A stretch of 64,000 nt of DNA, from assembly GCA_002269645.1 (NCBI GenBank), contig NIVC01001277.1, positions 62,001 to 126,000 on the forward strand. The letters are read 5' to 3'. Shown here in pieces: positions 737 to 64,000 of the stretch; the stretch's first letter is position 1; each line of letters begins with the position of its first letter. This stretch comes from Macrostomum lignano (Eukaryota). Position numbers and translations under genes: made by a program. The notes below the pieces were generated by a model that was given only the letters and a program-made list of their open reading frames with translations, ran no database searches and was not told where the DNA came from.

Positions 737-986
737 GTTTAACTCAGTGCAGATACTGAGCCATTCTTATACATGTAGGTCTAACGACCTCACGCTGTAC
801 CCGCCACAGCAAGATACAGTACAACCAAAGCATGGAATGAGGGTTTTGCCTTGGCTAGCTTTAAAGGCGGTAAGTGAGACAGGTAATAAGACTTGGGTTT
901 AGGAATTAGGAGGGGGGAATTGGTTTTGGTTAGGGTACAGGATAGAAGGACCTTGCTACATGGGATGGGGCAAGGCGTAGGATAGG

Positions 987-1258
987 AGGGGGCCTTGGTA
1001 TGGGATGCATGGGGTGCAGGACAGGAGGGGGTCTTGGTATGGGATGCACGGGGTGCAGGACAGGAGGGGTGTAGGACAGGAGGGGGTCTTGGTATGGGAT
1101 GCATGGGGTGCAGGACAGGAGGGGGTCTTGGTATGGGATGCACGGGGTGCAGGACAGGAGGGGGTCTTGGTATGGGATGCACGGGGTGCAGGACAGGAGG
1201 GGGTCTTGGTATGGGATGCACGGGGTGCAGGACAGGAGGGGTGTAGGACAGGAGGGGG
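987..1258. repeat. 40-bp minisatellite (ggggtcttggtatgggatgcacggggtgcaggacaggagg)
   Basis: Near-identical tandem units seen directly. Confidence 0.9.
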
Positions 1259-1462
1259 CCTGGTTTGGGGTCGGGGGTGGGTGCGTGGGTTTGGGGTCGG
1301 GATTGGGTGCGTGGCGGTGGTGGGTTTGGGGTCGGGGTGGGTTTGGGGGTCGGGGTGGGTTTGGCGTCGGGGTGGGCGTCTTCGGGGCGCCCTCTCCCCT
1401 CATTGGCCGGGTGCCCCGGCCAATCCCGTGCGATGGCGGTAGAGGGTACCACTTTCCTACTA

Positions 1463-1464
<2 letters not shown>

Positions 1465-1533
<69 letters not shown>
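1465..1533. repeat. (TCTG)n microsatellite
   Basis: Perfect tetranucleotide run. Confidence 0.95.
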
Positions 1534-1574
1534 TTCTGACGACAGGAAAATGAAATCCCAGTCTCCGTTCTCAC

Positions 1575-1932
1575 CTAGAAAGTCGACGGTGTACCGCCGA
1601 CCTTTCTCCGCCTCCTCAGTCTCGTCTTCGTTCTCGCCGAGTTCATTCTCCAGCGGCCTCTGGCTGCCGTCCTTGGCCAGCAGTAGGTGGCGGTACTGCC
1701 TGGCCACGTGACTCCCCGGTAGCGTCCGGCGCAGCTCCCTGGCGCCGCGCAGGTCGAAAATGCAGCGAATTCCATACCGGTTTCTCAGCTCGTCGACTCC
1801 CTCGGCGGACAGGCGCTCAACGTAGCCGGAGCGGTACAGCAGGGCCCGGCCCGACGGCAGGCTGACCTGACGAAAGTTGGGCAGTCGGCTCAGACTGCGG
1901 GTGCCCACCTCCAGGGCGAATGTCGGCTCCAT
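1575..1932 (-). CDS. First coding exon of a tyrosine-phosphatase-family protein (Y_phosphatase3/IphP-like); remainder beyond left edge
   Basis: LPNFRQV...LLYRSG...LRNRYGIRCIFDLRGARE matches the N-terminal NFRD/LYRSG/IDLR motifs of PF13350. Donor CTAG|GTGAG at 1574; acceptor CAG 2 nt before the ATG. The catalytic HCxxGKDR motif is not in the window. Confidence 0.7.
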
Positions 1933-7030: not shown

Positions 7031-7742
7031 CTACCCCAGTGTATCTCACTCTCTCTACCCTAGTGTATCTCACTCTCTCTACCCCAGTGTATTTCACTCT
7101 CTCTACCCCACTGTATCTCACTCTCTCTACCCTATCTCACTCTCTCTCTATCCCAGTGAATCTCACTCTCTCTACTCCAGTGTATCTCACTCTCTCTACC
7201 CCACTGTATCTCACTCTCTCTACCCCATCTCACTCTCTCTCTACCCCAGTGTATCTCACTCTCTCTACCCCACTGTATCTCACTCTCTCTACCCCACTGT
7301 ATCTCACTCTCTCTACCCCAGTGTATCTCACTCTCTCTACCCCACTGTATCTCACTCTCTCTACCCCAGTGTATCTCACTCTCTCTACCCCACTGTATCT
7401 CACTCTCTCTACCCCAGTGTATCTCACTCTCTCTACCCCACTGTATCTCACTCTCTCTACCCCACTGTATCTCACTCTCTCTACCCCACTGTATCTCACT
7501 CTCTCTACCCCACTGTATCTCACTCTCTCTACCCCAATGTATCTCACTCTCTCTACCCCACTGTATCTCACTCTCTCTACCCCACTGTATCTCACTCTCT
7601 CTACCCCACTGTATCTCACTCTCTCTACCCCAGTGTATCTCACTCTCTCTACCCCAGTGTATCTCACTCTCTCTATCTCACTCTCTCTACCCCAGTGTAT
7701 CTCACTCTCTCTACCCCAGTGTATCTCACTCTCTCTACCCTA
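7031..7742. repeat. 24-bp minisatellite (ctctctaccccactgtatctcact)
   Basis: Tandem units; produces spurious 8-aa-periodic ORFs. Confidence 0.92.
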
Positions 7743-8502
7743 CTGTATTGATCCTCTTCAATAAAGTCTTTCTCCTCTTGTATTTTCTCATATTCCCTCC
7801 CATCTATTCCCATCTCCCCAATGCTCGCCAAGCGCTGCTGAAGGCAGTTTCAGAGTAATTAATAGCACGAAGACAGGAGCTTCGTGAACTGCAAACCACG
7901 CGGGGAGGCTGGATAGCGGAGGAAAACTCGTGATGGAGGAGGATTCGGGAAGAGGAGGATGAGGCTGAGGATAGACAGAGAGAGGCTGCAGGAGCCATTT
8001 TATCGATCCAATAACCTGTGGAGGCCTCAGCGGGCGAGCCTCAGCCCTCTGCCCTCCTTTCCCCTGCAGCTTGCCTCCTCCCAACAGCGACCGGACCCAA
8101 AGCTCCGCGTGTGTCACCAGCATTGGATCCTCAGGCCCGCCTGATCTCCGCCGCTGCCTCTGACCAGCCATTCTCTAACTGGGTCCGAGGATCGGGGAAG
8201 GGAGTCCAACCCCCTCAGCTTCCCCCCGCTCTCCAGCCTCACCTGGTGGATCCAAACGCCTCCAGGATCCAACCCCAAACGCCGCCCGAGCCCCCAACCC
8301 CACTTTTCCCATTCTCCGCTCGGCTCCCCGCGGCGCTTCTCCCGATCTCCCAGAGCGAGTGCCGGAGCCCCACCCCCGGCCTCGGAGCCTCGGTGAGAGC
8401 GGCGCCACCCATAAAAAATGGCCTTCCTTCCCTCCAACACGGGGCAGACAATCAGTGAAGAATCAGTGAATCTGGAGAAAATTTTCTGTCTAGAAGAAAA
8501 TC

Positions 8503-8775
8503 ATGAGCCTCATCAGTCCTCAAGCGGCGAGTGTTCACGTCCTGTGCTGCCCCCACTGCTCCTACATGACCCTGCAGCAGGGCAATCTGGTTTCCCACCT
8601 GTCCTCTGAGCACTGCACTGCTGCTCCTGAAAGCAAGGAACTGGAAGAGCCGCAGCAACAGGCCGAGCCAAAGGTGCAGCTGCACAAGTGCACCCTGTGC
8701 AAGACCATATCAACCCAGTGGGCTCTGATGCTGGACCACATGGCTCTGTACCATGACATCTCCGACACTGAGAAG
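8503..8775 (+). CDS. Exon encoding two C2H2-type zinc fingers; probable first coding exon of the downstream TALE homeobox gene
   Basis: CPHCSYMTLQQGNLVSHLSSEH and CTLCKTISTQWALMLDHMALYH (C-x2-C-x12-H-x4-H). Acceptor TCTAG 9 nt before the ATG; phase-0 donor AAG|GTAATT at 8776. Confidence 0.7.
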
Positions 8776-9439
8776 GTAATTTTGCCTGCTTTGAAAATTT
8801 TCGTATTAGAACTCAAACCCCGTGCTCAAATCTCATTGGACGCGGCTGATCTGTCCAGCTTCTCATTCGCGAGCTTCTCCCAGCCTCATCTCGTATGAAA
8901 ATAAAGCCAATGAGAGCTCAGCTGCTGCTCTCCATCATCTCGGGATCTGGGAGAAACGGATTATTCCAACTTTCAGTCATTTGAGATGTTTAAATCTGAT
9001 TTTCTGCGAGTGTTTTGCTCAACCGGGACCCTTCGAATTTGAGAAATTTTCTGTGTAAAATGGTTCGAAGAAGTTTGCACCATTGTGCCCAACGAACTGT
9101 TCCTGATGCAGCATAGAGTCTGGATAATGGACAGATTGAGAAATCTAAATGGAAAGACAATAAAAAAACTGAAAAATAGCAAGAAAAAAAACATTTTACT
9201 TAGGGAAATAGATCCGGATAGTAAGAGGGGTAGAGTAGAAAGGGGAGGAGGAGTAGAAGAGAGATAGAGGAAGAAAGGAGAGAGTAGACCGGATAAAAAA
9301 AGAGAAGGAAGAGTAAAGAGGGGAGAGTGGACAAGAGAAGAGAGTAGATAGAAGAGTAGAGACTGAACAGGGGAGAGTAAATAGGAGAGTAGAGTGTATT
9401 GACAGAGTAGAGTATAGAGTAGACAGTAGACAGGGTAAA

Positions 9440-9740
9440 GTAAAGAGATGAGAGCAGAGATGGGAGAGTAGACAGGGTAGAGCAGAGATGGGAGAGTAGA
9501 CAGGGTAGAGCAGAGATGGGAGAGTAGACAGGGTAGAGCAGAGAGGGGAGAGTAGACAGGGTAGAACAGAGATGGGAGAGTAGACAGGGTAGAGCAGAGA
9601 GGGGAGAGTAGACAGGGTAGAGCAGAGAGGGGAGAGTAGACAGGGTAGAGCAGAGAAGGGAGAGTAGACAGGGTAGAGCAGAGATGGGAGAGTAGACAGG
9701 GTAGAGCAGAGATGGGAGAGTAGACAGGGTAGAGCAGAGA
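9440..9740. repeat. 28-bp purine-rich minisatellite (gggagagtagacagggtagagcagagaN), copy 1
   Basis: Tandem units; degenerate purine-rich lead-in from about 9220. Confidence 0.9.
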
Positions 9741-10734
9741 AGGAACAGAGGCGGCAGTGAAACGGAAATGCGGCTCCCTTAGCCAGGCCAGCAGACTGCA
9801 GACCATGCAGTTTTACAGCCAGCCGGGTGTCTGTCTTCATCACCCCTTTCTCCCTCACTGCCTCAGCTCTGCTTTCCTCTACTTGAATTGTCGAGTTGGG
9901 ACAAAGATATGCTGCAACCTCAGAGGCTGGGTTCGCTGTGATGCTGCTCTCCATCTCTGCCGCTGAATCCATCATCATCAATAGATTTCTCGGTGCAGCC
10001 AGAGGCCAAGCAGAGCTGAGTCATCAGAGCCGCTCCCCTCGCAGCCTCTCTGCTTGGCCGAACTGCAATGGCTTTACCGAATGCGTTTAGTCTGTTTTGC
10101 TTTGAAAATTTTCGTATCCGAACTCAAACCCCGTGCTCAAATCTCATTGGTCGCGCCTGTGATATCCAGCTTCTCAATTGCGAATTTCTCTCAGCCTCAA
10201 TCTATGAAAATAAAACCAATGAGAGCTCAGCTGCTGCTCTCCATCATCTCGGGATCTGGGAATAGCGGATTATTCTGCTTCTGAATCTTGGGAATTCCAG
10301 TCGGAATTTCTGCGAGTGTTTTTCCCCCAAGTCTGTCGCTAAGCTGGGACTCGCCTAGATGCACCAAATTTCATGGCGCAAGGCCTTCAGCAGAGCTGAA
10401 CTTTCACAACATGGATGCTTTGAAACTTTTAGGCGATGTAAAATTTTCATGTAGGTCTTGTAAAAGCGACCCGTGTCAGGAGACAAGTTGAAAATGGAAA
10501 TCTAAGGCAGAAGACAGCAAATGTCTTTTGTTTTTTAGCGATAAAAAGGGAATGCTATTTGGGAAGACTGGTTGAGTAGAGAGAGATAAGGAGAGAAAGT
10601 GGAGGAGGGTAGAGATAGGGGAGAAGAGAGGAGAGAAGGCGAGTAGTGAGTAGATAGAGCAGAGTAGAGAGGGGAGAGTTGAGTAGAAAGGAAAGAGTAG
10701 AGAGTAGAGAGTAGAGTAGAGACGGAGATTTAAG

Positions 10735-11490
10735 AGTAGACAGTAGACAGGGTAGAGCAGAGAAGGGAGAGTAGACAGGGTAGAGCAGAGAAGGGAGAGT
10801 AGACAGGGTAGAGCAGAGAAGGGAGAGTAGACAGGGTAGAGCAGAGAAGGGAGAGTAGACAGGGTAGAGCAGAGATGGGAGAGTAGACAGGGTAGAGCAG
10901 AGATGGGAGAGTAGACAGGGTATAGCAGAGAGGGGAGAGTAGACAGGGTAGAGCAGAGAAGGGAGAGTAGACAGGGTAGAGCAGAGAAGGGAGAGTAGAC
11001 AGGGTAGAGCAGAGAAGGGAGAGTAGACAGGGTAGAGCAGAGAGGGGAGAGTAGACAGGGTAGAGCAGAGATGGGAGAGTAGACAGGGTAGAGCAGAGAT
11101 GGGAGAGTAGACAGGGTATAGCAGAGAGGGGAGAGTAGACAGGGTAGAGCAGAGAAGGGAGAGTAGACAGGGTAGAGCAGAGAAGGGAGAGTAGACAGGG
11201 TAGAGCAGAGATGGGAGAGTAAACAGGGTAGAGCAGAGATGGGAGAGTAGACAGGGTAGAGCAGAGATGGGAGAGTAGACAGGGTAGAGCAGAGAGGGGA
11301 GAGTAGACAGGGTAGAGCAGAGAAGGGAGAGTAGACAGGGTAGAGCAGAGAAGGGAGAGTAGACAGGGTAGAGCAGAGAGGGGAGAGTAGACAGGGTAGA
11401 GCAGAGAAGGGAGAGTAGACAGGGTAGAGCAGAGATGGGAGAGTAGACAGGGTAGAGCAGAGATGGGAGAGTAGACAGGGTAGAGCAGAG
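10735..11490. repeat. 28-bp purine-rich minisatellite, copy 2 (longer)
   Basis: Same unit as 9440-9740, followed by the same unique block. Confidence 0.9.
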
Positions 11491-11498
11491 AAGGAACA

Positions 11499-11846
11499 GA
11501 GGCGGCAGTGAAACGGAAATGCGGCTCCCTTAGCCAGGCCAGCAGACTGCAGACCATGCAGTTTTACAGCCAGCCGGGTGTCTGTCTTCATCACCCCTTT
11601 CTCCCTCACTGCCTCAGCTCTGCTTTCCTCTACTTGAATTGTCGAGTTGGGACAAAGATATGCTGCAACCTCAGAGGCTGGGTTCGCTGTGATGCTGCTC
11701 TCCATCTCTGCCGCTGAATCCATCATCATCAATAGATTTCTCGGTGCAGCCAGAGGCCAAGCAGAGCTGAGTCATCAGAGCCGCTCCCCTCGCAGCCTCT
11801 CTGCTTGGCCGAACTGCAATGGCTTTACCGAATGCGTTTAGTCTGT
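11499..11846. repeat. About 350-bp block duplicating 9748-10095
   Basis: gaggcggcagtgaaacgg...gaatgcgtttagtctgtt reads identical in both places. Confidence 0.9.
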
Positions 11847-12953
11847 TAGTCAGTCAGCTCGTAGATTGCGAGCAATTTCTCTCTCTGCTTCCCTCGCCCC
11901 TTGCCGCTCGCGATCCCCACGCAATTCTCCGGGCATTATCTCTATCTCCACCAGCCCTCGCTCGGTCTGTGCCGCTGCGCCGCCGCTTCTAGGAGAAACT
12001 GGGGTGGGGGGGGGCGGGTTGGGGTTCGAGGACAGGAAAATTTGCAGCGGCAGGAGAAGAAGAGGAGAAAGCAGAAGAGAGATAGCCTTTTTCCCCGGGG
12101 CGCTGCATAGGAGAAGCCTCGGGCTTATCCATGCAACGGGGAGTTCCTGCGCACCATCTTGTTTATCTTCAGTCTCCGTCTCTACCTGCCCCCCCCTCAC
12201 TCTCTCTTCGCTCATTTTCTCCGATTCCTCAGCCAGAGAGGCTGAGGCTGTATAACTGGGGCGGCAATCAGAGAGGGGGTCGCCGCTGCTGCGCCGCTTA
12301 TGGAATTTATGGAGCAGTCCGCCCCCAGCCGTATATTTCTGAATGCGGGCTCGCTATGCGCCCTCTCCTCCGCCAGCCTCCTCTGCGCTGGGTCGGAGAG
12401 CGGGTGAAGGTCAAAGGGGTATAAAGGGAAATCTCCCCTTCTGAGGCTGGACAATCCAGCCGGATTACCGGAGACGATGCAGCTCCCAGTCTGTCGCCTG
12501 GGAAAGTCAAGGCCCCATACTACATGAAAACAAACAATGCGGAGCTGCAGTCGGAAGAGGATCTCTCCGATTTCGGTCGGCGTCGGAGAGGAAGCTTTCG
12601 AAAGTCTCTCTCGGAGGGCTCCCCAATTATGAAAGCAACTGGGGAAGACTGAGAGAGAAGAGGCGATGCGCAGCGGGGGGTCCGGCCGCCCCCGCGGAGA
12701 AAGGCTCTGTGGAGGAGGAATTCTCTCAGGCCGCTGGGATCCCAGAGCTGGCCTTCCATGAGCGTCAATCACTGCGGCCCCGAAGCTGCTCTCTGGGACC
12801 GCTGGCTGCCCCGTCTCTTTGCTGGCAAATCCCCTCGCTCTTCCATCTACTTTCTCCCGGCCGCCCGCCCCAAGGGCGCCACGGCAGCACACACGGGAGC
12901 CAATGCTGCAGCTCTCCCGTATTCCTTCTCTCTCCCCCCTTTGCGCTTTGCAG

Positions 12954-12999
12954 CAGATCGGTCTCTTGGCTTCCGAAGACCTCCGCCTGCAGCCCGGCA

Positions 13000-13037
<38 letters not shown>

Positions 13038-14219
13038 ACTTCTCCCAGCCAGCAGCAGCCAATCGGTTCGAGGAAGAGAAAGTCAACCGTGCCGGTGAGT
13101 GAAGCCTCGAGGCTGCCCTGCCGCCGCCTCCCCCATCCGAGGCGGACGCGCAGCTATGCATGCGCAGAAGCCTCTTTACTGCCACTCAGTTTCTCCTCCC
13201 TGATCTGCCCTGCATGCCTGCTGGTCTCTGGCGCTCTGTCTCTGGAATAGCATCCCCTCAGCCTCTCGGAGCCCGCCCGGCAACCAGTGATGAATGGCCC
13301 CCCCCCGCCCCCTACCACTCTCTGTTCCCCCACTCTTCTCCATCTCTCTCTCTCTCTTGATTTCGGCTAGTCATTTTTTTACCTTGCCGCCTTCATCCCA
13401 GCCGCAGCTGCCGGCCTCATCCTCACTCACCACCATGTTGCTGAAATCTCCCATCTCCCCAACCCCGCGACCCCCAAGCCCTCTCCACATCCCTCCCGCT
13501 CCATCTCCATCCCCAAGTTTCCCTAAATATCCCGCGCTGCTGCCGGAGGGGCCTCGGGTCCACTTTGCTAGACCTCGAGTGAGCGAGAGAGACAGCGAGA
13601 TGGAGAGCTGCGGGCAGCTAATTGGGGGGCTCGGGATGGGGAGAGATAAGACAGAAGCGGGAGAATCCAGTGATGGGCAGAGCCCCTTATCTATAAGCTT
13701 GGCGCTCCTTATCTATAAGCTTGGCGCTCCTTATCTATAAGCTTGGCGCTCCTTATCTATAAGCTTAGCGCTCCTTATCTATAAGCTTGGCGCCCCTCAT
13801 CTATAAGCTTGGCGCTCCTTATCTATAAGCTTGGCGCTCCTTATCTATAAGCTTGGCGCCCCTTATCTATAAGCTTGGCGCCCCTTATCTATCCACAAAT
13901 TTGTCAATCAATCTCAGGAGAAGCTCTGCTCGGATTCCGATGACTCCGCAACGCCACTCGCTGTTTCCAACAGCAACGGAAAGCAGAAGCAGTCGCAGCC
14001 GCAGCAGCAGCTGCAGCAGCAGCAGCAAACTCCGACTCGAGTTGAGAAGCATTCGAACTCTGCAGCCAGGAATCGGAACAAGGAGGCTTTGCAGCAGCAG
14101 TTGCTCCAGCAGCAGCTTCAGCAGCAGCAGCAACAACAACAGCAACGGCAGCAGCAGCAATACTATCAAAGCCAGCAACAGCAACAGCTCCAGCTTCAAC
14201 TCAAGCTGCATCATCACAC

Positions 14220-14266
<47 letters not shown>

Positions 14267-16357
14267 CGAGCCTCCCCGCTGGCTTCTTCTTGTTCGGACC
14301 GACCAAGCTCGCCGCCTCGGGCCTGCAGCCGCAACTGCCGCAGCCGCAGCCGCAGCAAAACTTTCTTGGGCCAGCGCCGCCTCAGCTGCAGAGTTTTAAT
14401 TTCGGCCGGTCTTTTCAACTGACACCGTCGCTGTCTGTGAGTTGCCGCGTTCTCTGCTCGAATATTTAAATTTGCGTTACTTGCCTACTATGAGTAGGAT
14501 AATTATGCTTGTTTTGATGTGTTGAAATATTTAGTCCGACGCGACACTGATAGAGTAATTGATAGTGACAGTTCATAACGAGTGAGGGACAGATGTACAT
14601 TTAGTGTGACTGACAGTCTCGGAGTGACAGTCTCGGAGTGACAGTCTCGGAGTGACAGTCTCGGAGTGACAGTCTCGGAGTGACAGTCTCGGAGTGACAG
14701 TCTCGGAGTGACAGTCTCGGAGTGACAGTCTCGGAGTGACAGTCTCGGAGTGACAGTCTCGGAGTGACAGTCTCGGAGTGACAGTCTCGGAGTGACAGTC
14801 TCGGAGTGACAGTCTCGGAGTGACAGTCTCGGAGTGACAGTCTCGGAGTGACAGTCTCGGAGTGACAGTCTCGGAGTGACAGTCTCGGAGTGACAGTCTC
14901 GGAGTGACAGTCTCGGAGTGACAGTCTCGGAGTGACAGTCTCGGAGTGACAGTCTCGGAGTGACAGTCTCGGAGTGACAGTCTCGGAGTGACAGACTCCT
15001 CAACCAATCAAATCAAATTTGAATATTTCAGGTCACGGAGCAGCCCCAGCCCGAGGAGGTCCCGGCCGCGCTGGACCTCAGCGTCAAGGACGTCAAGACG
15101 CCGCAGCCGCCACAGCTGATTCCGGGTGTCAAGTCCCTGTCGCCGCCAATGCTGCAGCAGCACCAGCAGCAGCCGCCGCCGCCGCCGCCGCCGCTGCACA
15201 CACCGGGCCAGTCATTGGGCGCTCGGCAGCGGCGCTCCGGCCAGCAGCGGCACCGCGCCTCAGCAGCCAGACGGGCCGCCAAGCTCAGCTCGCCCCCGAT
15301 GAAGTTTTCCGAGGTGAACTCGCCGGTCGCGGCGCCGGCGGCCTCCGAGGAGGATGGCTCTCTCCTGCTGTCAGGCGGCAGCGGCGGCGGCGGCGGCGGC
15401 CGGAGCAAGGCGCAGCGGCAGAACTTCAGCCCGGCGCAGAACCGCCTGCTGTTGAAGTGGTTCAACGAGCACAGCGACAAGCCCTACCCCTCTGGCGACG
15501 ACACCAAGGAGCTGTCGGAGATCACCGGGCTGAACTACGCGCAGGTGAAGAAATGGTTTGCCAACAAGAGGATGCGATCGAAGGTCACGGGCCAGGGCCT
15601 CGACACGCAGCCGCTGTCGTCTGCAAACAGCCCGCAGCAGTGGGGCGATGAGGCGGAGGTGAGGCTGGAGAAGCTCAAAGCTGCTTGGCGTCCTGGAGCC
15701 TAGAAACAGCTGGAGAGTAGATAGTTGAAAGGGGAGTAGAGAGTAGAATGGGGAGCAGAGAGTAGAATTGGGAGAGCAGAGTAGAATTGGGAGAGCAGAG
15801 AGTAGAATTGGGAGAGCAGAGTAGAATTGGGAGAGCAGAGAGTAGAATTGGGAGAGCAGAGTAGAATTGGGAGAGCAGAGTAGAATTGGGAGAGCAGAGT
15901 AGAATTGGGAGAGCAGAGTAGAATTGGGAGAGTAGAGAGTAGAATGGGAGAGCAGGGAGTAGGAAGGGGAGAGTAGAGAGTAGGAAGGGGAGAGCAGGGA
16001 GTAGGAAGGGGAGAGCAGGGAGTAGGAAGGGAGAGCAGGGAGTAGGAAGGGGAGAGCAGGGAGTAGGAAGGGGAGAGCAGGGAGTAGGAAGGGGAGAGCA
16101 GGGAGTAGGTAGAAAGGGTAGAGTAGAGAGAAGTAATAGCCGTTGACTTGCTTTAGTAAATGCACAGTAACAAGATGGTAAAATTTTCAATAATAATTCT
16201 CTACAGTTTCCTAGCCTCACCCTTACTTACCCTTACATCCTTGCAGCTGTGCAGCATCAACAGAATGGATCAGGAGAACCTGGAGAAGGACAGCCTGAGT
16301 CTCAATCTCAACGATCATCCAATGAACAGCGACAGCGGCGAGGCGACTGAGTGTTGA
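12954..16357 (+). CDS. TALE-class homeobox transcription factor (divergent; polyQ, CtBP-type motif)
   Basis: Exons 12954-13094, 13918-14436, 15032-15658 and 16247-16357 (stop), all phase 0 with canonical AG/GT. Homeodomain at about 15401-15583: KAQRQNFSPAQNRLLLKWFNEHSDKPYPSGDDTKELSEITGLNYAQVKKWFANKRMRSK (TALE loop plus PYP). ALDLSVK at 15068-15088. The 5' end is uncertain, probably exon 8503-8775. Confidence 0.85.
13684..13892. repeat. 22-bp intronic minisatellite (cgctccttatctataagcttgg)
   Basis: Tandem units just before the 13918 acceptor. Confidence 0.9.
14610..14995. repeat. 14-bp intronic minisatellite (ggagtgacagtctc), about 27 copies
   Basis: Perfect tandem array. Confidence 0.95.
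15745..16110. repeat. 19-bp and 21-bp purine-rich intronic minisatellites
   Basis: gggagagcagagtagaatt units followed by ggagagcagggagtaggaagg units. Confidence 0.85.
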
Positions 16358-16816
16358 ACGTCCAATCCCTCCATTGAAAATCCCAATTCATACATGGACA
16401 TGGAACTCATTTTGTGAAGTTTTCCCCACTCGCTCGGCCCCTGTCCAGCTTCTTGTAACATAGTTCGCACAAAACATGTAAAACGCTACGTTAATCGCGC
16501 TTTTGTTTTTGCTTTCTAAGATTACTACTGCTCATTAGTAGTGAGCAGCGTCCAGTCGAGGTTGACGAAACGTTCTTGTACATTTTTAGCTCGTAAGCAA
16601 GTCATCACCATTGGTCGCGAGAAACAGCTTAAATTTATTGTTTAGATAAAATCTGCTTTGCTCGTGGTCAAATCTTTAGTTTAAAAAAACAAACAAAAAT
16701 AAACGAAAACTTATTAAATCACTGCTGCAAATCGAAATAACTCATTTTGGTTCGAGACTTTTGATTTCTTACTGACTACGGTCACGAATTCAAACGGATG
16801 CAACAAGACTGCACGG

Positions 16817-17305
16817 AGTCCCGCTGTCTCACCAAGGAGTCCCGCTGTCTCACCAATGAGTCCCGCTGTCTCACCAATGAGTCCCGCTGTCTCACCAAGG
16901 AGTCCCGCTGTCTCACCAAGGAGTCCCGCTGTCTCACCAAGGAGTCCCGCTGTCTCACCAAGGAGTCCCGCTGTCTCACCAAGGAGTCCTGCAGTCTCAC
17001 CAAGGAGTCCTGCAGTCTCACCAAGGAGTCCCGCTGTCTCACCAATGAGTCCCGCTGTCTCACCAAGGAGTCCCGCTGTCTCACCAATGAGTCCCGCTGT
17101 CTCACCAAGGAGTCCCGCTGTCTCACCAAGGAGTCCCGCAGTCTCACCAAGGAGTCCCGCTGTCTCGCCAAAGAGTCCCACTGTCTCATCAAGGAGTCCC
17201 GCTGTCTCACCAAGGAGTCCCGCTGTCTCACCATGGAGTCCCGCTGTCTCACCAAGGAGTCCCGCCGTCTCATCAAGGAGTCCCGCTGTATCACCAAAGA
17301 GTCCC
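16817..17305. repeat. 21-bp minisatellite (gagtcccgctgtctcaccaag)
   Basis: Tandem units; source of 7-aa-periodic spurious ORFs. Confidence 0.92.
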
Positions 17306-18392
17306 GCTCCCATTCCCTACCCACCAGGCGGTTTCCATAAAAGAGAAACTGACTGAGCCAAGGCAAGAATGTTTAGCCGAATAAAAGTCTTAGGCAGCCA
17401 AGCAGATCTTTGCAATGAGAGGCCAGGCAAGCTACCTGCATACTACTCATTGCGACCCTGGCTGCACAGTAGTATATAGCAGTATATTTAATTAGCTATC
17501 AGAATAGAACTCACACGCAAATTGCATGCGGCTGGGGGGGGGCTCAGCAACATAAATAATAAAAAGTCTGACAGAAATTCACAGCACAATAAGTCCAATA
17601 AAATTGAAATACAGATTCTTAGAAAGCAAAATTGAAAACATATTACGGAATGATAATAAAGAACCTTTGTTGTAATGTGCGGCATTCGTTAGTTACTTAT
17701 TCAACAAGGTAAAGAGCATATAAAAGTGGAAATAACAGAGCCTGTTTGCAGAGAACTTTGTATCAGTAATAATAACAAATAATAATAATAATAATATAAG
17801 GACGCAAACTCGATGGCGTACGCCAGACAGTGTAGTGGAGGCTGTGATGTGGAGCATATATATGACGGATATATCATACAAAATGATAGTAGCTATAAAA
17901 AAACAAAAAACGCTAGCGGTAAACAGAGATTACTTGGCGAACAGGCCTGTTTCAATAGTGAAGAAAAATATTTATAAATAAAAAAGCAGGATAAAATGTT
18001 GAGGGCTACTGCTGTCAGTAGCAATATTTGGACATGCGCAGAGGAATGAATGGAAGTGGAGAGGAATGGTGGAGAAGATTTTAGGAATCAGTTGCATTTG
18101 AAGAGTTTCAGCCAAGCCTTTGCACTCCGGAGATTTAGTCAAGTGTCATAACAAAAAAACCGTTATTACAATGATAACTGAAAAAACATTACATAATTTA
18201 ACAGAAAATTATAACATACAAGCGTATTATTATTAATTAAATATTCAATTATATGTTGGACCGAACTTAAATGCAGCAATTTGCAAAGCACTCACTCACT
18301 CAGGTGAATTCTGAAAAATCAATAATGGCATAACCAGTTCTCCCCGCAGATACTACTCGTAGAATAACTACTAGGGCCACTCTGGCATATAT

Positions 18393-18903: not shown

Positions 18904-21900
18904 TCAGCCGGTTAGAAAGGACAAACGGGTCAGCTTCCCGTATCCTGCGGCCAGCGCCATCACCAGGCAGCTGGTTAGTAGTGCGGCGGAGACTGTGAGA
19001 GCAGAGGCGGTGTTGTAGTCGATGCAGTATGGGCACTGGAAGCTGCCGCACACCTTGCAGATGTCGCTGCTATGCAGCGAGCGGGCGCTGTAGAACGAGA
19101 AGTTCCTGTTGTCTGCGGGTGGCGGGTTGTTAGGGAATGGGCTCGATTTTCAGTAAGGAGTACATAAATTTCTGGTTGATTAAGTTTTCTACGCAACATA
19201 TCGGTGACAATACAAACCTTTATTTAGCATCATTTATCTCATTTGATTCGATACAAATGTTCCATACCTAGTTTCCCCTCAAAATTCCCCTCTGATTCTC
19301 TTGAAATTATCCTCGATTCTCTTGAAATTATCCTCTGATTCTTTTGCTATACCCCTCTGATTCTCTTGCAATTCCCCTTTGGTTCTCTTGCAATTCCCCT
19401 CTGATTCTCTTGAAATACCCCTCTGATTCTCTTGCAATTCCCCTTTGATTCTCTTGCAATTACCCTCTGATTTTCTTTCAATACCTCTCTGATTCTCTTG
19501 CAATACTCCTCTGATTCTCTTGGAATTAGAATCTGATTCTCTTAAGATTCCCTTCCGATTCTCTTGGGAATTCCCCTCTGATTATCTTGTAAATCCTCCC
19601 TGATTCTCTTGCAATTCCCCTTTGATTCTCTTGAAATTATCCTCTGATTCTCTTGTAATTCCCCTCTGATTTCCTGCAATCCCTATCTGATTCTCATGGA
19701 AACTCCCCTCTGACAATCCTCCCACAATTCCCACAATCACTCCGGACCCTCACCAAATTCAAAGTACTCATAGACGTTGCATGGCTGCTCAACAGTGGTG
19801 TTGGCGACTGGGTACCACCTCGGTATGGGGATGGTGACGCAGGTTGGCTGCACGGAAGTGAACTGGAATGAAAATCAGAACAATAATTGCAATGTACTTT
19901 AGTCATGTACAGAGCAAAGGGCAGACCGTTGTCGTGCGGTTCACAGCCCACAGAGTGCACATGCCTGATGATTAGACAATCAGGGCACACCCTGGCGCCA
20001 TTGTGTCCACAGCCCTACAGCAGCCCGCAACTGCGCACTCACGTTGGTGAAGAAGACATTGAGGTACTGCCCGACCATCCAGATGTGCCGCAGGCCGCGA
20101 ACATTGCTAGTTTGCACAAAATTGCGCATATCATAATTAGTAACCAGGTAGCCGGATGGCACGGTGAACTGCAGCAGCGCCATGCCGCTGGTCTCCGATC
20201 TGGCCGTCCAAGTCCATCTGGAATGGAGAAATTCGTTAAACATTATTTAATTATAATAGATGAATAATGTCATGTGAGAAATCTTAGATTGACAGGCAAT
20301 GGTGTGTCAGCGAGTGGGGTCCTGCTCAGCGGTTTCTAAGAACACTAGTTAAACATACTCTAGAATGTGCACTAGTTAAATACGGGTATCTATGTGCATT
20401 AATTAAACATGCATTACAATGAGCATCAGGTAAACTAAACATACATTACAATGTACATTAGTTAAACATACATTGCAGTGTACACTAGTTAAGCATAAAT
20501 TACAGTGTACACTAGTTAAACATACACTACAGTGTACATTGGTTAACATACACTACAATGTAAATTAGTTAAATATACATTACAATGTACACTAGTTAAA
20601 CATACTCTAAAATGTACATAGGGTAAACATAAACTACAATGTACATTACTTCAACATACATTACAGTGTACATTACTTCAACATACATTATTACAGAGTA
20701 CATAGGGTAAACATACACTACAGTGTACATTGGTTAAACATACACTACAGTGTACACAGGCCAGAGTACACCGTCTCGGCTCACCTGGCGCACGCAGTCA
20801 TGTGCATCATACTGCTATTCCGGCCGCTGAATGTCGGCACGCAGCTGAGCTCGAAGGTCTGGAACGGCGTGTTCGGCTTGTTGGGATCGATGGCATTCTT
20901 CACTAGGAACTCCTGCTCGACGCTTTTCGTGGTGAACATGTGCAGCACGGCGCGGCCGCTGCCTGTAGCTCGGATCATCACCTCGCCCCAGGTGTTGTCG
21001 TTGTCCAAGTAGAAAGTTCGCGGAATGCTCAGATTGTTGCCGTCCAGCCTGAGACTGCTGGATTTGCTCGTGTCGGAGGTCGGGTTGATGTCCACCTGCA
21101 GGGAGTAGATGACTCGGTTGAAGTCCAACTGGGCGACCTCGCGAAGTGCCCTGACAGCGAACAGCGTGTCCTGCGTGGAGATCCAGCCCTGGGGAGCGTT
21201 CTTCGTCTCCGTGATGAAGTTGATGACCTTGGTGATGTTGCTCTTCAGCTCTGGCTTGGAGCTCACGGATTTGAACATGGCGAGCATGGCGAACGAGGAA
21301 GCCTGCAGGGAAGGCATTGATAAACTCACCGTGTTAAACTCACCGTATTGATTGCTTTTAACTAACTGGGAATTCCGAAATCTCACGGGAAATCCAAAAA
21401 TCTCAAGGGGAATCACAAGATCTCACAGGAAGCCTCAAAATCTTATAGGGATTCTCAAAATCTCAGGAATCCCAAAATCAATGCAACATCTATAGAAATG
21501 AAATATTTTAATATTTTAACAGAAACTCGAACACGAAATTAAACAACCTAAACAATCTCAAAGAAACCTTAACCGAGAAGCCTCACCGGTAACCCCCACC
21601 CGGGGAAGCCTCACCGGTACCCCACCCAGGGGAAGCCTCACTGGTACCCCAACCGGGGAAGCCTCACCCTCACCGGTACCCCAACCGGGGAAGCCTCACC
21701 GTTAGCCCCCACCCAGGGGAAGCCTCACCGGTACCCCAACCGGGGAAGCATCACCGGTACCACAACCGGGGAAGCCTCACCGGTACTCCAACCGGGGAAG
21801 CCTCACCGGAACCCCAACCGGGGAAGCCTCACCGGTACCCCAACCGGGGAAGCCTCACCCTCATCGGCAACCCCAACCGGGGAAGCCTCACCCTCATCGG

Positions 21901-24900
21901 CAACCCCAACCGGGGAAGCCTCACCGGAAACCCTACCCCAGGAAGCGAACCCCAGCCGCCTAATTGAAGCCCGCTCACCTGCACAGCATAAGCATCGTTG
22001 GGCCACTCAATCCTGGCCTTGATGATCACTTTTCCAGCTGAATCTGGCTCCCGGATCAGCGGCTTGACCCGTCTGTTGGCCCAATAGAGATAGTTGTCAT
22101 CCCTGGCAATGCTCATCAGCAGGTTCATAGCCGTGCTCTTATCCGAGGAGGAGGAGTCGAAGGTGAGCGCGTAGGCGGTCATGGCCAGACTGAGGGCGTC
22201 CTCCGTCATTTTGCTCAGGTGCCGCTTCAGGTACTGAATGGCCGCGGTGGATACCCGGCTGGCATGCGAGCCCAGACTCATGGGGATGCTCGGGTGCCTG
22301 GTTGCGATCACCGCCAGAGCTGTGATGGGGACGCGGCGCAGGTAGACATTGTTAGCCGGGTTCACCGACTTGTCCTTGATGTAGACATTAAAGTACTTCA
22401 TGTCCCATTGGATATCGTCTGTGAAAGAGCCGGCCAGGCTGGGGTCCACGGCTCCAGTGTCCTGGGTGGCATTCAAGTACAGGATGAACTTCTGGAACAG
22501 GTCAGCGTTGATGGCGGTGACTCGGTCCCACTGCGAGAAGGAGGTCTCCGCCAGGGTGAACAGGCCGAACGCCGTCAGGAAAGTGCTTGTCTCCGTGTTG
22601 AACCGTTCGGGAAAGTTGGCCATGCCGCCAGTGACGGGGTTGATGTAGAATGAGAGTCTGGACAGCTGCGAGTTCACGTACTCGAGAGCGGAGTTGAGAG
22701 TTGCCGCCTCCAGCTGCTTGGTCATGCGCAGGTAGTGCAGCATCTGCACGTTCCAGTTGATGTTGAACAGGACGCTCTCGCCGGACCCGATGGGCCGCCA
22801 GACGGTGCTGGCCGCGTCTCCGTAGGGCATCTCGTTGCCGAGGGACGGGCCGACAATGTCTCCGACCACGCTGATCTTGGTGTACTTGGAGCCGGGCACG
22901 AAACGGCGCCAACGGCGCTCCGGCTCTACGAAGGCCTGCTCAGGCGTGATGAAGAAGTTCTGGGCGAGCAGCTCGGAGTTGGAGACCAGGTCGAGCAGGA
23001 TGGGAGTGCTGTAGTTGTTGGGGGCGCCGTTGATCTGCGGGGGACATTGGAGGGCACCGTTTACTGAATTGGTTGACTACTATTGATAGAAGGTACAGAT
23101 ACTGTAGCTGTGTACGCTCGTACACAGACTACTCATGATTTTACAGATACAGGTAATGTACCCGCGTACACAGACCACTGTTGATTGTACAGATACAGAC
23201 ACTGTACCTGCGTACAGACTACTCATGATTGTACCTACAGATAGTGTACCAGTGTACAAAAAGTTCACTTTGATGCAGAGACAACAAGCCAGACTCACAA
23301 TGACGGGCACATTAACGGTGGAACACTCTCCGCCATTGAACGAGTAGGCGCAGAAGGTGATGGTGGTATTTCCGGTGTTCCTGGGCAGCACAGGGAAGTA
23401 CAGCATCCGGTGACCACCAGCGGGCAGGAAGACCACCGTGTGCACGTTCTCGTTGCTGGCCAACTCTGGGGCATAACTGTTCACCTGGCCTCGGTAGCCC
23501 ACCTTGATGAAGTCGTACTCGGTACTTTTCTTCAGCTCGATAATCACCTGGAGTTCGATTGTTTGGCGGAAGCTAAGCCTTAAGGTACGGTGACTATGGA
23601 GCTTTTCTTTCTATCTTTCAGATCCCCTATGCACCCAAGGATCCCTAACAGCACGGATCCCATGTTTCCCCAAGGATCCCTAACAACCCGGATCACAAAT
23701 ATCCCCAAGGATCCCTACCAACCCGGATCACAAATATCCCCAAGGATCCCTAACAACCCGGATCACAAATATCCCCAAGGATCCCTAACAACCCGGATCG
23801 TATATATCCCCAAGGATCCCTAACAACCTAGATTTCTAACAACCCGGATCCCATATTTCTCCAAGGATCCCTAACAACCCGGATCACAAATATCCCTAAG
23901 GATCCCTGACAGCATGGATCCCATATTTCCCCAAGGATCCCTGACAGCATGGATCCCATATTTCCCCAAGGATCCCTAACAACCCGGATCCCATATTTCT
24001 CCAAGGATCCCTAACAACCCGGATCCCATATTTCTCCAAGGATCCCTAACAACCCGGATCGCATATTTCTCCAAGGATCCCTAACAACCCGGATCCCAAA
24101 TATCCCCAAGGATCCCTAACAACCCGGATCCCAAATATCCCCAAGAATCCCTAACAACCCGGATCGCATATTTCCCCAAGAATCCCTAACAACCCGGATC
24201 CTATATATCCCCAAGGATCCCTAACAACCCCGATCCCAAATATCCCCAAGGATCCCTAACAACCCGGATCCCATACTTCTCCAAGGATCCCTAACAACCC
24301 GGATCCCAAATATCCCCAAGGATCCCTAACAACCCGGATCCCAAATCCCCAGACCCAGCACCAGCCCAGGGCAGCTTACCTCAGTCCAGTAGTCGAACCT
24401 GTTGAACACGGCCACCCGAACTCCAATCTGCTCTCCCCAATAGGCGTACGGCGGCGCTTCCAGCACCATGTAGAACCGTCGGGTGGAAGTGAACCTGGTC
24501 GGCACGCTCTGCACCTGAACGCCGCGCTCGCCATCGATGGCGATGGCGCCGACCACCCAGGAGGTCTCCAGCTTCGGCGTCACCGCCGGATTGAACGGAA
24601 CTCGGCCGTTCATGTTGGCTCTGGAACGGGTGCAGCAAGGCGGAGCCGTGTCTACTGGGACTGTCTACCGTGTCTATTGGGACTGTCTACCGTGTCTACT
24701 GGGACTGTCTACCGTGTGTACTGGGACTGTCTACCGTGTGTACCGGGACTGTCTACCAGTGTCTACTGGGACTGTCTACCGTGTGTGTCTACTGGGACTG
24801 TGTCTCTCTACAAATAGGTCTACTCTATCTACAGACAATGTCCTGGCTCTCACTTCATATAGACATCCTGCCAAAGCCACAGATCATCATATATAAAGTG

Positions 24901-49738: not shown

Positions 49739-64000
<14,262 letters not shown>

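What the first reader, a model, noticed from the sequence alone, without database searches (positions are those of the whole stretch)
8494..16357. Candidate new architecture: C2H2 zinc fingers + polyQ + CtBP motif + TALE homeodomain in one protein
Seen: the two-finger exon ends in a phase-0 donor, and the next clear exon (12954) and all later exons are phase 0, giving an open chain of about 556 aa. Knowledge: animal ZF-homeodomain proteins (ZEB/Zfh, ZHX, Tshz) have non-TALE homeodomains, and animal TALE classes (PBX, MEIS, PREP, TGIF, IRX, MKX) lack C2H2 fingers. Inference: a lineage-specific ZF-TALE repressor may exist here.
Basis: partly seen in the sequence, partly recalled or inferred. Interest (0 to 1): 0.75.

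Follow-up and report, generated by a model that had tools for sequence, protein, structure and literature searches.

The report
Flatworm zinc-finger plus TALE homeobox gene
This stretch of the flatworm Macrostomum lignano genome most likely holds one five-exon gene for a transcription factor that joins two zinc fingers to a TALE-type homeodomain, an unusual but lineage-restricted domain pairing also seen in at least two sister genes of the same species.

Summary
Window 8503-16357 (+) contains five canonical GT-AG, phase-0 exons that read as an open 556-aa chain. It has two C-x2-C-x12-H-x4-H fingers, poly-Q tracts, a GSRKRK basic patch, an ALDLSVK motif and a 63-residue TALE homeodomain.

The window is Macrostomum lignano. 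The join of the finger exon to the homeobox exons has no RNA evidence here, but comparative evidence supports it:
- An older paralog locus (NIVC01000981.1) has a homologous finger exon upstream on the same strand. It has the same five-exon, all-phase-0 structure and reads as 553 aa.
- UniProt model A0A1I8H3Y9 joins that paralog's finger exon to exons 2 and 3 at exactly those junctions.
- A third paralog model, A0A1I8FDA7, carries finger region and TALE homeodomain in one protein.

Exon 2 of the window gene has no ATG, and conserved coding starts right at its acceptor.

Two points fall short. The "CtBP motif" lacks the defining Pro/Gly, so the repressor call is unsupported. The architecture already sits, unremarked, in unreviewed database models.

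No relative outside Macrostomum carries the fingers, and two rotifer TALE relatives lack them. Verdict: a real, lineage-specific new domain combination of known parts, of moderate interest.

The parts
8407..8416 (+). ACCCATAAAA, a TATA-like 10-mer about 90 nt upstream of the finger-exon ATG. Candidate core promoter element (inferred).
   Evidence: The identical 10-mer, preceded by a C-rich run, lies at a similar distance upstream of the paralog's finger-exon ATG. In both loci no ATG lies between the element's own ATG and the start codon.
8503..8775 (+). Exon 1, 91 codons: start codon and two atypical C2H2 fingers (ZF1 8548-8613, ZF2 8689-8754, both C-x2-C-x12-H-x4-H) separated by a 25-residue linker. 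Phase-0 donor AAG|GTAATT.
   Evidence: tblastn finds a homologous exon in paralog locus L001 (E 1e-15, 39% identity, all 8 zinc ligands kept). An exhaustive phmmer search hits C2H2 arrays down to E 1e-16 and the paralog model P0016 at E 3e-9. pN 0.42 is below pS 0.63.
8776..12953 (+). Intron 1 (4.2 kb). It contains a tandemly duplicated block of about 1.3-1.7 kb, each copy carrying a 28-bp minisatellite (9451-9740 and 10742-11494), followed by a unique GC-rich 1.1 kb (11840-12953).
   Evidence: There is no nucleotide conservation with the paralog's 569-bp intron 1. The in-frame ATG at 12903 gives a peptide unrelated to the paralog's equivalent extension.
12954..13094 (+). Exon 2, 47 codons: DLRLQPGN block, a Q12 run and the GSRKRKSTVP basic patch (probable nuclear localisation signal). 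It has no ATG in frame. NAGNAG acceptor at 12951-12956.
   Evidence: It is homologous to paralog exon 2 from its first codons to ...GSRKRKLTVP. GSRKRK is invariant in all paralogs.
13918..14436 (+). Exon 3, 173 codons: Q-rich low-complexity region, starting EKL as in the paralog.
   Evidence: UniRef A0A1I8GZ23 (P0001, 99% identical) reads across the E3|E4 junction ...TPSLS|VTEQ....
15032..15658 (+). Exon 4, 209 codons: conserved motif AALDLSVK (15068-15088), Pro/Gln/Arg-rich linker and the 63-residue TALE homeodomain (15404-15592; R5, PYP in loop 1, W48 F49 A50 N51 K52 R53 M54 R55).
   Evidence: Pfam Homeobox_KN E 4e-15. Ungapped alignment to Exd/PBX. 82% nucleotide identity over 179 nt with the paralog. 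pN 0.12 against pS 0.60.
16247..16357 (+). Exon 5, 36 codons plus the TGA stop (16355-16357).
   Evidence: The E4|E5 junction ...GDEAE|LCSINRM... is present in P0001 and P0002.

Best explanation
Window 8503-16357 (+) is one protein-coding gene of Macrostomum lignano with five phase-0 exons. It encodes a ~556-aa nuclear transcription factor. From N- to C-terminus it has a pair of atypical, widely spaced C2H2 fingers, Q-rich low-complexity regions with a GSRKRK basic patch, a conserved [A/V/I]-L-D-L-S/R-x-K linear motif, and a TALE homeodomain.

It belongs to a small Macrostomum family of at least three diverged paralogs, plus near-identical duplicates, that share this layout.

Inferred mechanism, not shown:
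- The homeodomain gives sequence-specific DNA binding. Its recognition helix WFANKRMR differs from PBX/Exd WFGNKRIR only at positions 50 and 54.
- The two fingers have a 25-residue non-TGEKP linker. They are more likely a protein-protein or auxiliary nucleic-acid contact module than a classical tandem DNA reader.
- The LDLSxK motif is a candidate co-regulator docking site.
For: Gene structure in this window:
- All exon boundaries are canonical GT-AG and phase 0, and the chain is open for 556 aa.
- Exon 2 has no ATG. The next in-frame Met lies in exon 4, downstream of the conserved E2, E3 and LDLS blocks, so translation must start upstream of exon 2.

Comparison with paralog locus L001 (NIVC01000981.1):
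- It carries a homologous finger exon on the same strand upstream of its TALE exons (E 1e-15).
- It has the same five-exon, all-phase-0 structure, giving 553 aa.
- Protein similarity begins exactly at the exon 2 acceptor and ends at the exon 1 donor. The read-through tails and the upstream extensions of exon 2 are unrelated.
- Nucleotide conservation between the two loci is confined to ZF1 and the homeodomain.

Independent public models:
- UniRef100_A0A1I8H3Y9 (P0016) reads ...GAESRQ|QEDDLL... and ...KLTVP|EKLPTD..., which is the paralog's E1|E2|E3 at the predicted junctions.
- A0A1I8FDA7 (P0086), a third paralog, has the finger region, GSRKRK, LDLS motifs and TALE homeodomain in one 419-aa model.
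- A0A1I8GZ23 (P0001, 99% identical) confirms the E3|E4|E5 junctions of this gene.

Other support:
- A conserved TATA-like 10-mer lies about 90 nt upstream of the finger ATG in both loci.
- The finger pair is far beyond chance, and pN is below pS.
Against: - No RNA read or cDNA joining 8775 to 12954 could be examined.
- No database protein contains this locus's own finger exon.
- The RNA-seq-derived NCBI model of the paralog (BOX15_Mlig026076g1, P0003) starts inside exon 2 and lacks the fingers. However, its 5' end uses an out-of-frame ATG and a non-GT-AG junction.
- How the UniProt models were built could not be checked, because the Wasik et al. paper is not held. They may be ab initio predictions.
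- In-frame ATGs exist upstream of the exon 2 acceptor in both loci: window 12903 and L001 9838.
- M. lignano trans-splices about 39% of its genes, and about 7% of transcription units are multi-gene precursors (PMC5730564).
- The fingers fall below the Pfam gathering scores, and a single-sequence AlphaFold model was uninformative (pLDDT 36).
Confidence: 0.7

Rival explanations
1. There are two adjacent genes or cistrons. One is a small stand-alone two-finger protein (ORF 8503-8898, 131 aa unspliced). The other is a separate TALE gene whose mRNA starts in 11.9-12.9 kb, using the ATG at 12903, or is SL trans-spliced at 12954. The pairing is conserved between paralogs only as neighbourhood, possibly within one precursor transcript.
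For: - The NCBI transcript-based paralog model lacks the fingers.
- In-frame ATGs lie upstream of the exon 2 acceptor in both loci.
- Trans-splicing and multi-gene precursors are frequent in this species.
- A TATAAA lies at about 12420 in the GC-rich unique part of intron 1.
- No junction evidence exists for this locus.
Against: - Window exon 2 has no ATG. A trans-spliced mRNA would start translation only in exon 4 and lose the conserved E2 block, the GSRKRK patch and the LDLS block.
- The peptides from the upstream ATGs are unrelated between loci (17 and 38 residues, 24% identity), and 12903 sits in the polypyrimidine tract of a strong acceptor.
- At least six other ATGs lie between the TATAAA and 12903.
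- Both loci keep a consensus donor in phase 0 just after ZF2 and an acceptor in phase 0. The read-through tails are not conserved.
- Two independent UniProt models fuse the parts.
- No separate finger gene is called in the NCBI annotation of L001, and the homeobox gene there is named g1.
Confidence: 0.17
2. Both forms exist. An upstream promoter gives the ZF-TALE protein, and an internal promoter or trans-splice site in intron 1 gives a finger-less TALE isoform.
For: - The window's intron 1 is long (4.2 kb) and has a unique GC-rich 1.1-kb segment before exon 2.
- The paralog's exon 2 has an in-frame ATG at L001 10030 that could start a finger-less protein.
- The NCBI model starts in exon 2.
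Against: - Intron 1 shows no conservation between the loci.
- Window exon 2 lacks an ATG, so a finger-less isoform here would need the unconserved 12903 start.
- This reading is compatible with the best explanation rather than exclusive of it.
Confidence: 0.1
3. The finger ORF is a chance ORF, a decayed pseudo-exon or a transposon fragment, not part of any functional product.
For: - It falls below the Pfam gathering scores.
- It is not annotated in any database protein for this locus.
- The region is repeat-rich.
Against: - Its two fingers are the only C2H2 pattern matches in the window, and shuffles never give an in-frame pair.
- A diverged paralog conserves it with all zinc ligands kept.
- pN is below pS.
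- It is single-copy in the window, and the exhaustive search found only one close relative, which argues against a transposon family.
Confidence: 0.03

Closest known systems
M. lignano paralogs: UniProt A0A1I8FDA7 (419 aa), and A0A1I8H3Y9 plus NCBI BOX15_Mlig026076g1 (two partial models of one locus, NIVC01000981.1)
   Same: Same layout: HVLCCP-type ZF1, ZF2 with an STQ..LM..H core, GSRKRK, xLDL[S/R]xK and a TALE homeodomain ending QVKKWFAN(K/R)RMR. The L001 locus has the same five phase-0 exons.
   Different: Identity is 38-41% in the finger exon and 77% in the homeodomain. The window gene has much longer poly-Q runs. In A0A1I8FDA7 the ZF1 ligand spacing is altered (C-x5-C ... H-x3-C). The database entries are fragments or mis-modelled and are named only 'C2H2-type' or 'Homeobox domain-containing protein'.
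PBC class TALE proteins (Extradenticle / PBX1)
   Same: Best solved-structure matches, E 1e-10. The 63-residue homeodomain aligns without gaps, the NPYPS/KPYPS loop is shared, and the recognition helices WFGNKRIR and WFANKRMR are close.
   Different: No PBC-A/B domain was detected. Position 50 is Ala, not Gly. N-terminal fingers are unknown in the PBC class.
ZF-class homeobox proteins (Zeb/zfh-1, Zfhx, Zhx, Tshz, Adnp)
   Same: C2H2 or C2H2-like fingers together with a homeodomain in one protein. Zeb proteins also combine fingers, a homeodomain and CtBP-type motifs (PMC4901127, for the class; the Zeb CtBP motifs are from my own knowledge).
   Different: Their homeodomains are not TALE. Neither the fingers nor the homeodomain (Pfam Homez 13 bits against a cut-off of 21; ZHX3 at E 0.005, far below the TALE hits) shows any specific similarity to them. 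This is a convergent domain combination, not membership.
TGIF (TALE repressor that binds CtBP through PLDLS)
   Same: A TALE homeodomain with an xLDLS-type motif N-terminal to it. TGIF1 and TGIF2LX are significant PDB hits (E 1e-7 to 3e-5). The TGIF-CtBP link is from my own knowledge.
   Different: Position 50 is Ala, not Ile. The motif lacks the Pro. TGIF has no fingers.
Non-canonical spiralian TALE clades (TALE I-XIX, SPILE) and rotifer TALE genes (Adineta steineri P0004, Brachionus plicatilis P0005)
   Same: Lineage-specific, fast-evolving TALE genes outside the five canonical classes (PMC6118893). The rotifer proteins share QVKKWFANKRVRS and a YPYP loop, and Adineta has ALDLT near its N-terminus.
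   Different: The rotifer loci have no C2H2 pattern or finger-exon match within 10 kb (Adineta) or 3.2 kb (Brachionus) upstream. The published text on the spiralian clades that I read mentions no zinc fingers among them. Orthology to any named clade was not tested.

Membership tests
TALE superclass homeodomain | 63-residue homeodomain with three extra residues in loop 1 (PMC4901127) | tested here: met
   Ungapped alignment to Exd/PBX1 across the whole domain. A 3-residue gap is needed against engrailed, at ...FNEHSDKPY....
TALE superclass homeodomain | Match to Pfam Homeobox_KN above the gathering score | tested here: met
   55.8 bits against a cut-off of 24, E 4e-15. This scores higher than the generic Homeodomain model at 49.5 bits.
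PBC class | PBC-A/B (MEINOX-related) domain N-terminal to the homeodomain; Gly at position 50 | tested here: not met
   A Pfam scan of the 556-aa chain at E<=1 returned only homeodomain and finger models. Position 50 is Ala (sequence; class table).
MEIS/PREP and TGIF classes | Ile at position 50; for MEIS, an HM/MEINOX domain upstream | tested here: not met
   Position 50 is Ala, and no Meis_PKNOX_N hit was found.
IRO class | Arg5 and Ala50 (table in PMC4901127); IRO box downstream of the homeodomain | tested here: inconclusive
   R5 and A50 are met by reading the sequence against the table. No IRO-box model or IRO reference sequences were available, so the box and any phylogenetic grouping were not tested.
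C2H2 zinc finger | C-x2-4-C-x12-H-x3-5-H ligand pattern with a conserved hydrophobic core | tested here: met
   Two matches, both C-x2-C-x12-H-x4-H. They are unique in the window and absent from shuffles as a pair. All ligands are conserved in the L001 paralog.
C2H2 zinc finger | Pfam zf-C2H2 family match above the gathering score | tested here: not met
   zf-C2H2 scores 19.0 bits against 25.2, and zf-C2H2_4 scores 17.7 against 27. The exhaustive phmmer search does give 80 hits at E<=1e-3. Every one whose sequence I read, apart from the paralog model P0016, is a multi-finger C2H2 protein.
C2H2 zinc finger | Beta-beta-alpha fold | tested here: inconclusive
   The single-sequence AlphaFold2 model had a mean pLDDT of 36.5 and is uninformative.
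ZF-class homeobox genes (Zeb, Zfhx, Zhx, Tshz, Adnp) | C2H2 fingers plus a homeodomain, with homeodomain or fingers related to one of the five families | tested here: not met
   The architecture is met only descriptively. The homeodomain is TALE. The nearest ZF-class solved homeodomains score E 9e-4 to 6e-3, against 1e-10 for PBC. No ZF-class finger appears among the PDB hits.
CtBP-binding PxDLS motif | P (or G) at position 1: P-[LVIPME]-[DENS]-[LM]-[VASTRG] (ELM-type pattern, written from memory) | tested here: not met
   The regex has no match in the window protein or in any paralog. The conserved motif is [A/V/I]-L-D-L-[S/R]-[V/L]-K. Actual binding cannot be tested with these tools.

The most novel reading that the evidence does not exclude
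The ZF-TALE proteins are truly expressed as single polypeptides. They would then be a new, Macrostomum-restricted (or macrostomorphan) homeobox family, the first animal TALE family with C2H2 fingers. It would have arisen by capture of a two-finger exon upstream of a non-canonical spiralian TALE gene whose finger-less relatives survive in rotifers. The finger pair would give a PBC-like homeodomain a partner or targeting mode independent of the usual MEINOX/PBC domains.
Probability: 0.55. Interest if true: 0.5.

Novelty: new variant of a known kind. Interest (0 to 1): 0.42.

Why it matters
Homeobox classification treats the TALE superclass and the zinc-finger class as separate lineages with characteristic accessory domains. 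A TALE homeodomain that has recruited C2H2 fingers would be a clean, datable example of exon shuffling creating a new transcription-factor architecture, in a regeneration model organism.

It also shows that both current M. lignano annotations split or mis-model these genes. Homeobox surveys of this species would therefore miss the combination.

The practical consequence is limited. It is a lineage-specific family of unknown function, built from two very common DNA-binding domains.

Tried and rejected
1. A word-indexed search with the finger exon found nothing. The exhaustive search was needed.
2. Single-sequence AlphaFold2 of exon 1 gave pLDDT 36, so no fold search was run.
3. Exact-sequence look-ups led nowhere. 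No contig for the third paralog and no transcript contig could be fetched.
4. Aligning all 80 exhaustive hits failed in the tool. It was replaced by a local phmmer and regex scan, which found no homeodomain except in P0086.
5. The sigma-70 promoter and terminator scan is irrelevant to a eukaryote and gave nothing.
6. Literature searches for Macrostomum TALE genes, for a C2H2 plus TALE architecture and for Mlig026076 found no description. The Wasik et al. 2015 genome paper is not held, so the basis of the UniProt models is unknown.
7. I rejected a relationship to ZHX/Zfhx, which I first suspected from the H-x4-H fingers and the 'KKWF' helix. Neither the fingers nor the homeodomain scores specifically with that class.
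8. I rejected the canonical CtBP motif.
9. I rejected the ATG at 12903 as the main start. It lies in the acceptor's pyrimidine tract and its peptide is not conserved.

Full report
**What is in the sequence.** Window 8503-16357 on the + strand contains five segments bounded by canonical splice signals. Each has a length that is a multiple of three.

| Exon | Coordinates | Boundary signals |
|---|---|---|
| E1 | 8503-8775 | ATG in context AAAATCATGA; in-frame TAG 12 nt upstream; donor AAG\|GTAATT |
| E2 | 12954-13094 | acceptor ...ctttgcgctttgcag\|CAG, a NAGNAG site so 12957 is an alternative; donor CCG\|GTGAGT |
| E3 | 13918-14436 | acceptor cag\|GAG; donor TCT\|GTGAGT |
| E4 | 15032-15658 | |
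| E5 | 16247-16357 | TGA stop |

**The fingers.**
- E1 encodes CPHCSYMTLQQGNLVSHLSSEH and CTLCKTISTQWALMLDHMALYH. Both are C-x2-C-x12-H-x4-H.
- They are the only such patterns in all six frames of the 64-kb window. One hundred shuffles gave 0.14 matches per window and never an in-frame pair.
- Pfam finger models match below their gathering scores: zf-C2H2 scores 19.0 bits against 25.2.
- An exhaustive phmmer search of 1.84 billion representatives gave 80 hits at E<=1e-3. Those whose sequences I read (18 of the 80) are multi-finger C2H2 proteins of the CPxCxY type, apart from one key exception described below.

**The homeodomain.**
- It matches Pfam Homeobox_KN at E 4e-15.
- It aligns without gaps to Exd/PBX1 and needs a 3-residue gap against engrailed.
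- It therefore meets the TALE definition of Burglin & Affolter (PMC4901127).

**Organism and existing models.** The E4-E5 protein is 99% identical to UniRef A0A1I8GZ23 of Macrostomum lignano. That entry is a fragment starting inside E3, and it confirms the E3|E4 and E4|E5 junctions. No database protein contains this locus's finger exon.

**The decisive comparison.** An older paralog, NCBI BOX15_Mlig026076g1 (P0003, 360 aa, annotated without fingers), was fetched with 10-kb flanks as L001.
- tblastn with the window's finger exon finds a homologous exon on the same strand at L001 9158-9367. This lies about 600 bp upstream of the next exon (E 1e-15, 39% identity, all eight zinc ligands kept).
- Reading that locus gives the same five-exon, all-phase-0 structure: 9092-9382, 9952-10107, 10450-10974, 11470-12090 and 12920-12988. 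The chain is 553 aa.
- Protein similarity between the two loci starts at the E2 acceptor (DLRLQPGN against DLKLPGN). It runs to GSRKRK(S/L)TVP|EKL across the E2/E3 junction.
- The sequences just outside the proposed exons are unrelated. This holds for the read-through tails after the E1 donors and for the in-frame extensions upstream of E2.
- At the nucleotide level, only ZF1 (77% over 48 nt) and the homeobox (82% over 179 nt) are conserved.
- The finger exon shows pN 0.42 below pS 0.63. The homeobox shows 0.12 against 0.60. Synonymous sites are near saturation, so this is only supportive.

**Independent public models.**
- The one non-generic hit of the exhaustive search, P0016, is UniRef100_A0A1I8H3Y9, 'C2H2-type domain-containing protein', from M. 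lignano. Its sequence is the paralog's E1, E2 and E3, joined exactly at the junctions I had derived (...GAESRQ|QEDDLL... and ...KLTVP|EKLPTD...). It stops at the end of E3.
- P0016 and P0003 overlap on E3, so together they span fingers to homeodomain for one locus.
- A search with the paralog chain also returned P0086, which is A0A1I8FDA7. This is a third, more diverged M. lignano paralog. Its single 419-aa model contains the HVLCCP finger region, an intact ZF2, GSRKRK, two xLDL[S/R]xK motifs and the TALE homeodomain.
- I could not establish whether these UniProt models rest on transcripts, because the source paper is not held.

**Why the NCBI model does not contradict this.** P0003 begins at an ATG inside E2 that is out of frame with the conserved reading. 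It reaches the E3 frame through a junction (L001 about 10019 to 10608) that is not GT-AG in any register and lies between CAGCAG repeats. A frame-shifting artefact of that kind would make an ORF caller pick the 360-aa ORF whether or not the transcript contained the finger exon. The NCBI annotation calls no other gene in the 23-kb locus.

**The rival.** M. lignano trans-splices about 39% of its genes, and about 7% of transcription units are multi-gene precursors (PMC5730564). A two-gene arrangement is therefore a fair alternative, and both loci have an in-frame ATG upstream of the E2 acceptor (window 12903, L001 9838). Four points count against it.
- Window E2 has no ATG, so a trans-spliced mRNA would lose all the conserved N-terminal blocks.
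- The two upstream peptides are unrelated.
- The ATG at 12903 lies inside the pyrimidine tract of a strong acceptor.
- Both loci keep a phase-0 donor immediately after ZF2.

A shared ACCCATAAAA element about 90 nt upstream of the finger ATG in both loci is a weak hint of a promoter there. I put the single-gene reading at about 0.7. Without RNA it is not proven.

**What kind of protein it is.**
- No PBC, MEINOX or other accessory domain is detected.
- The homeodomain has R5 and A50, the pair listed for the IRO class. Its best solved-structure matches are PBC (E 1e-10), then TGIF and MEIS.
- The recognition helix WFANKRMR is close to PBX WFGNKRIR. It is a non-canonical TALE, and class placement is unresolved.
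- The nearest non-Macrostomum relatives found are rotifer TALE proteins sharing QVKKWFANKRVRS, at E about 1e-3. Their loci contain no finger exon or C2H2 pattern upstream.
- None of the other 79 exhaustive finger hits has a homeodomain.
- The published spiralian TALE classification describes many lineage-specific clades. The text I read mentions no fingers, and it excluded flatworms and rotifers (PMC6118893).
- The review of homeodomain classes lists ZF-class families, none of them TALE, and notes C2H2-HD proteins in fungi.

**The 'CtBP motif'.** The conserved element is [A/V/I]-L-D-L-[S/R]-[V/L]-K. The canonical pattern requires Pro or Gly at the first position, and it is not matched in any paralog. 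The motif is clearly conserved and may be a degenerate CtBP site or another docking motif. 'Repressor' is not established.

**Verdict.** This is a real gene and very probably a ZF-TALE fusion shared by a small Macrostomum family. It is a new combination of well-known parts. It already sits unrecognised in unreviewed database entries, and no function is known. Interest is moderate.

Noticed in passing
window 9451-9740, 10742-11494, 13685-13892, 14611-14998, 15712-16108; L001 9538-9867, 10115-10365, 10982-11249, 12230-12729: Every one of the four introns carries its own minisatellite array (periods 14-30 bp), in both the window gene and its diverged paralog. The arrays are unrelated between introns and between loci. 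Further arrays flank the gene at 7031-7748 and 16815-17308.
   Followed up: partly
window 8790-10097 and 10100-11840: Intron 1 contains a tandem duplication of a block of about 1.3-1.7 kb that starts right after the exon 1 donor (GCTTTGAAAATTTTCGTAT...). Each copy includes the 28-bp satellite and a unique tail ending ...GAATGCGTTTAGTCTGTT. The finger exon itself is not duplicated.
   Followed up: partly
L001 10001-10608 (NIVC01000981.1, gene BOX15_Mlig026076g1): The NCBI protein starts at an ATG out of frame with the conserved exon 2 reading. It reaches exon 3 through a junction that is not GT-AG in any register and lies between CAGCAG repeats. The 5' end of the model looks like an assembly or mapping artefact.
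   Followed up: partly
P0016 (UniProt A0A1I8H3Y9) against L001 10450-10974: This model removes an extra GT-AG interval inside exon 3 (...SQGPE|TLAISS...). It could be an alternative intron inside the Q-rich coding exon or a prediction artefact.
   Followed up: no
P0002 (UniProt A0A1I8FEM0, 'Pecanex-like protein'): This chimeric model starts at this gene's exon 4, skips the homeodomain (...SSPPMK|SRGQGLDT...), and reads past the stop (GEATD-ISSR...) into unrelated Ala/Arg-rich sequence. It comes from another near-identical copy of the gene.
   Followed up: no
window 12951-12956: The exon 2 acceptor is a NAGNAG site (gCAGCAG). Two isoforms differing by one Gln are possible.
   Followed up: no
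window 20781-28817 (-): Several minus-strand exon-sized ORFs match alpha-2-macroglobulin/TEP domains: MG2, A2M bait region and TED (E 1e-14 to 1e-20). A large A2M/thioester-protein gene lies downstream of the homeobox gene.
   Followed up: partly
window 54584-55972 (-); 35640-36581 (-); 42211-43128 (-); 790-1932 (-): Other neighbours are a PI-PLC X-domain gene (E 1.5e-62), an eIF5/eIF2-beta-like ORF (below the Pfam cut-off), a hAT transposase dimerisation-domain remnant (E 1e-9) and a Y_phosphatase3-like ORF.
   Followed up: partly
window 58459-60643: A purine-rich (GA) satellite of about 2.2 kb shows extreme GC and AT skew. It creates spurious 500-720-aa ORFs on both strands.
   Followed up: no
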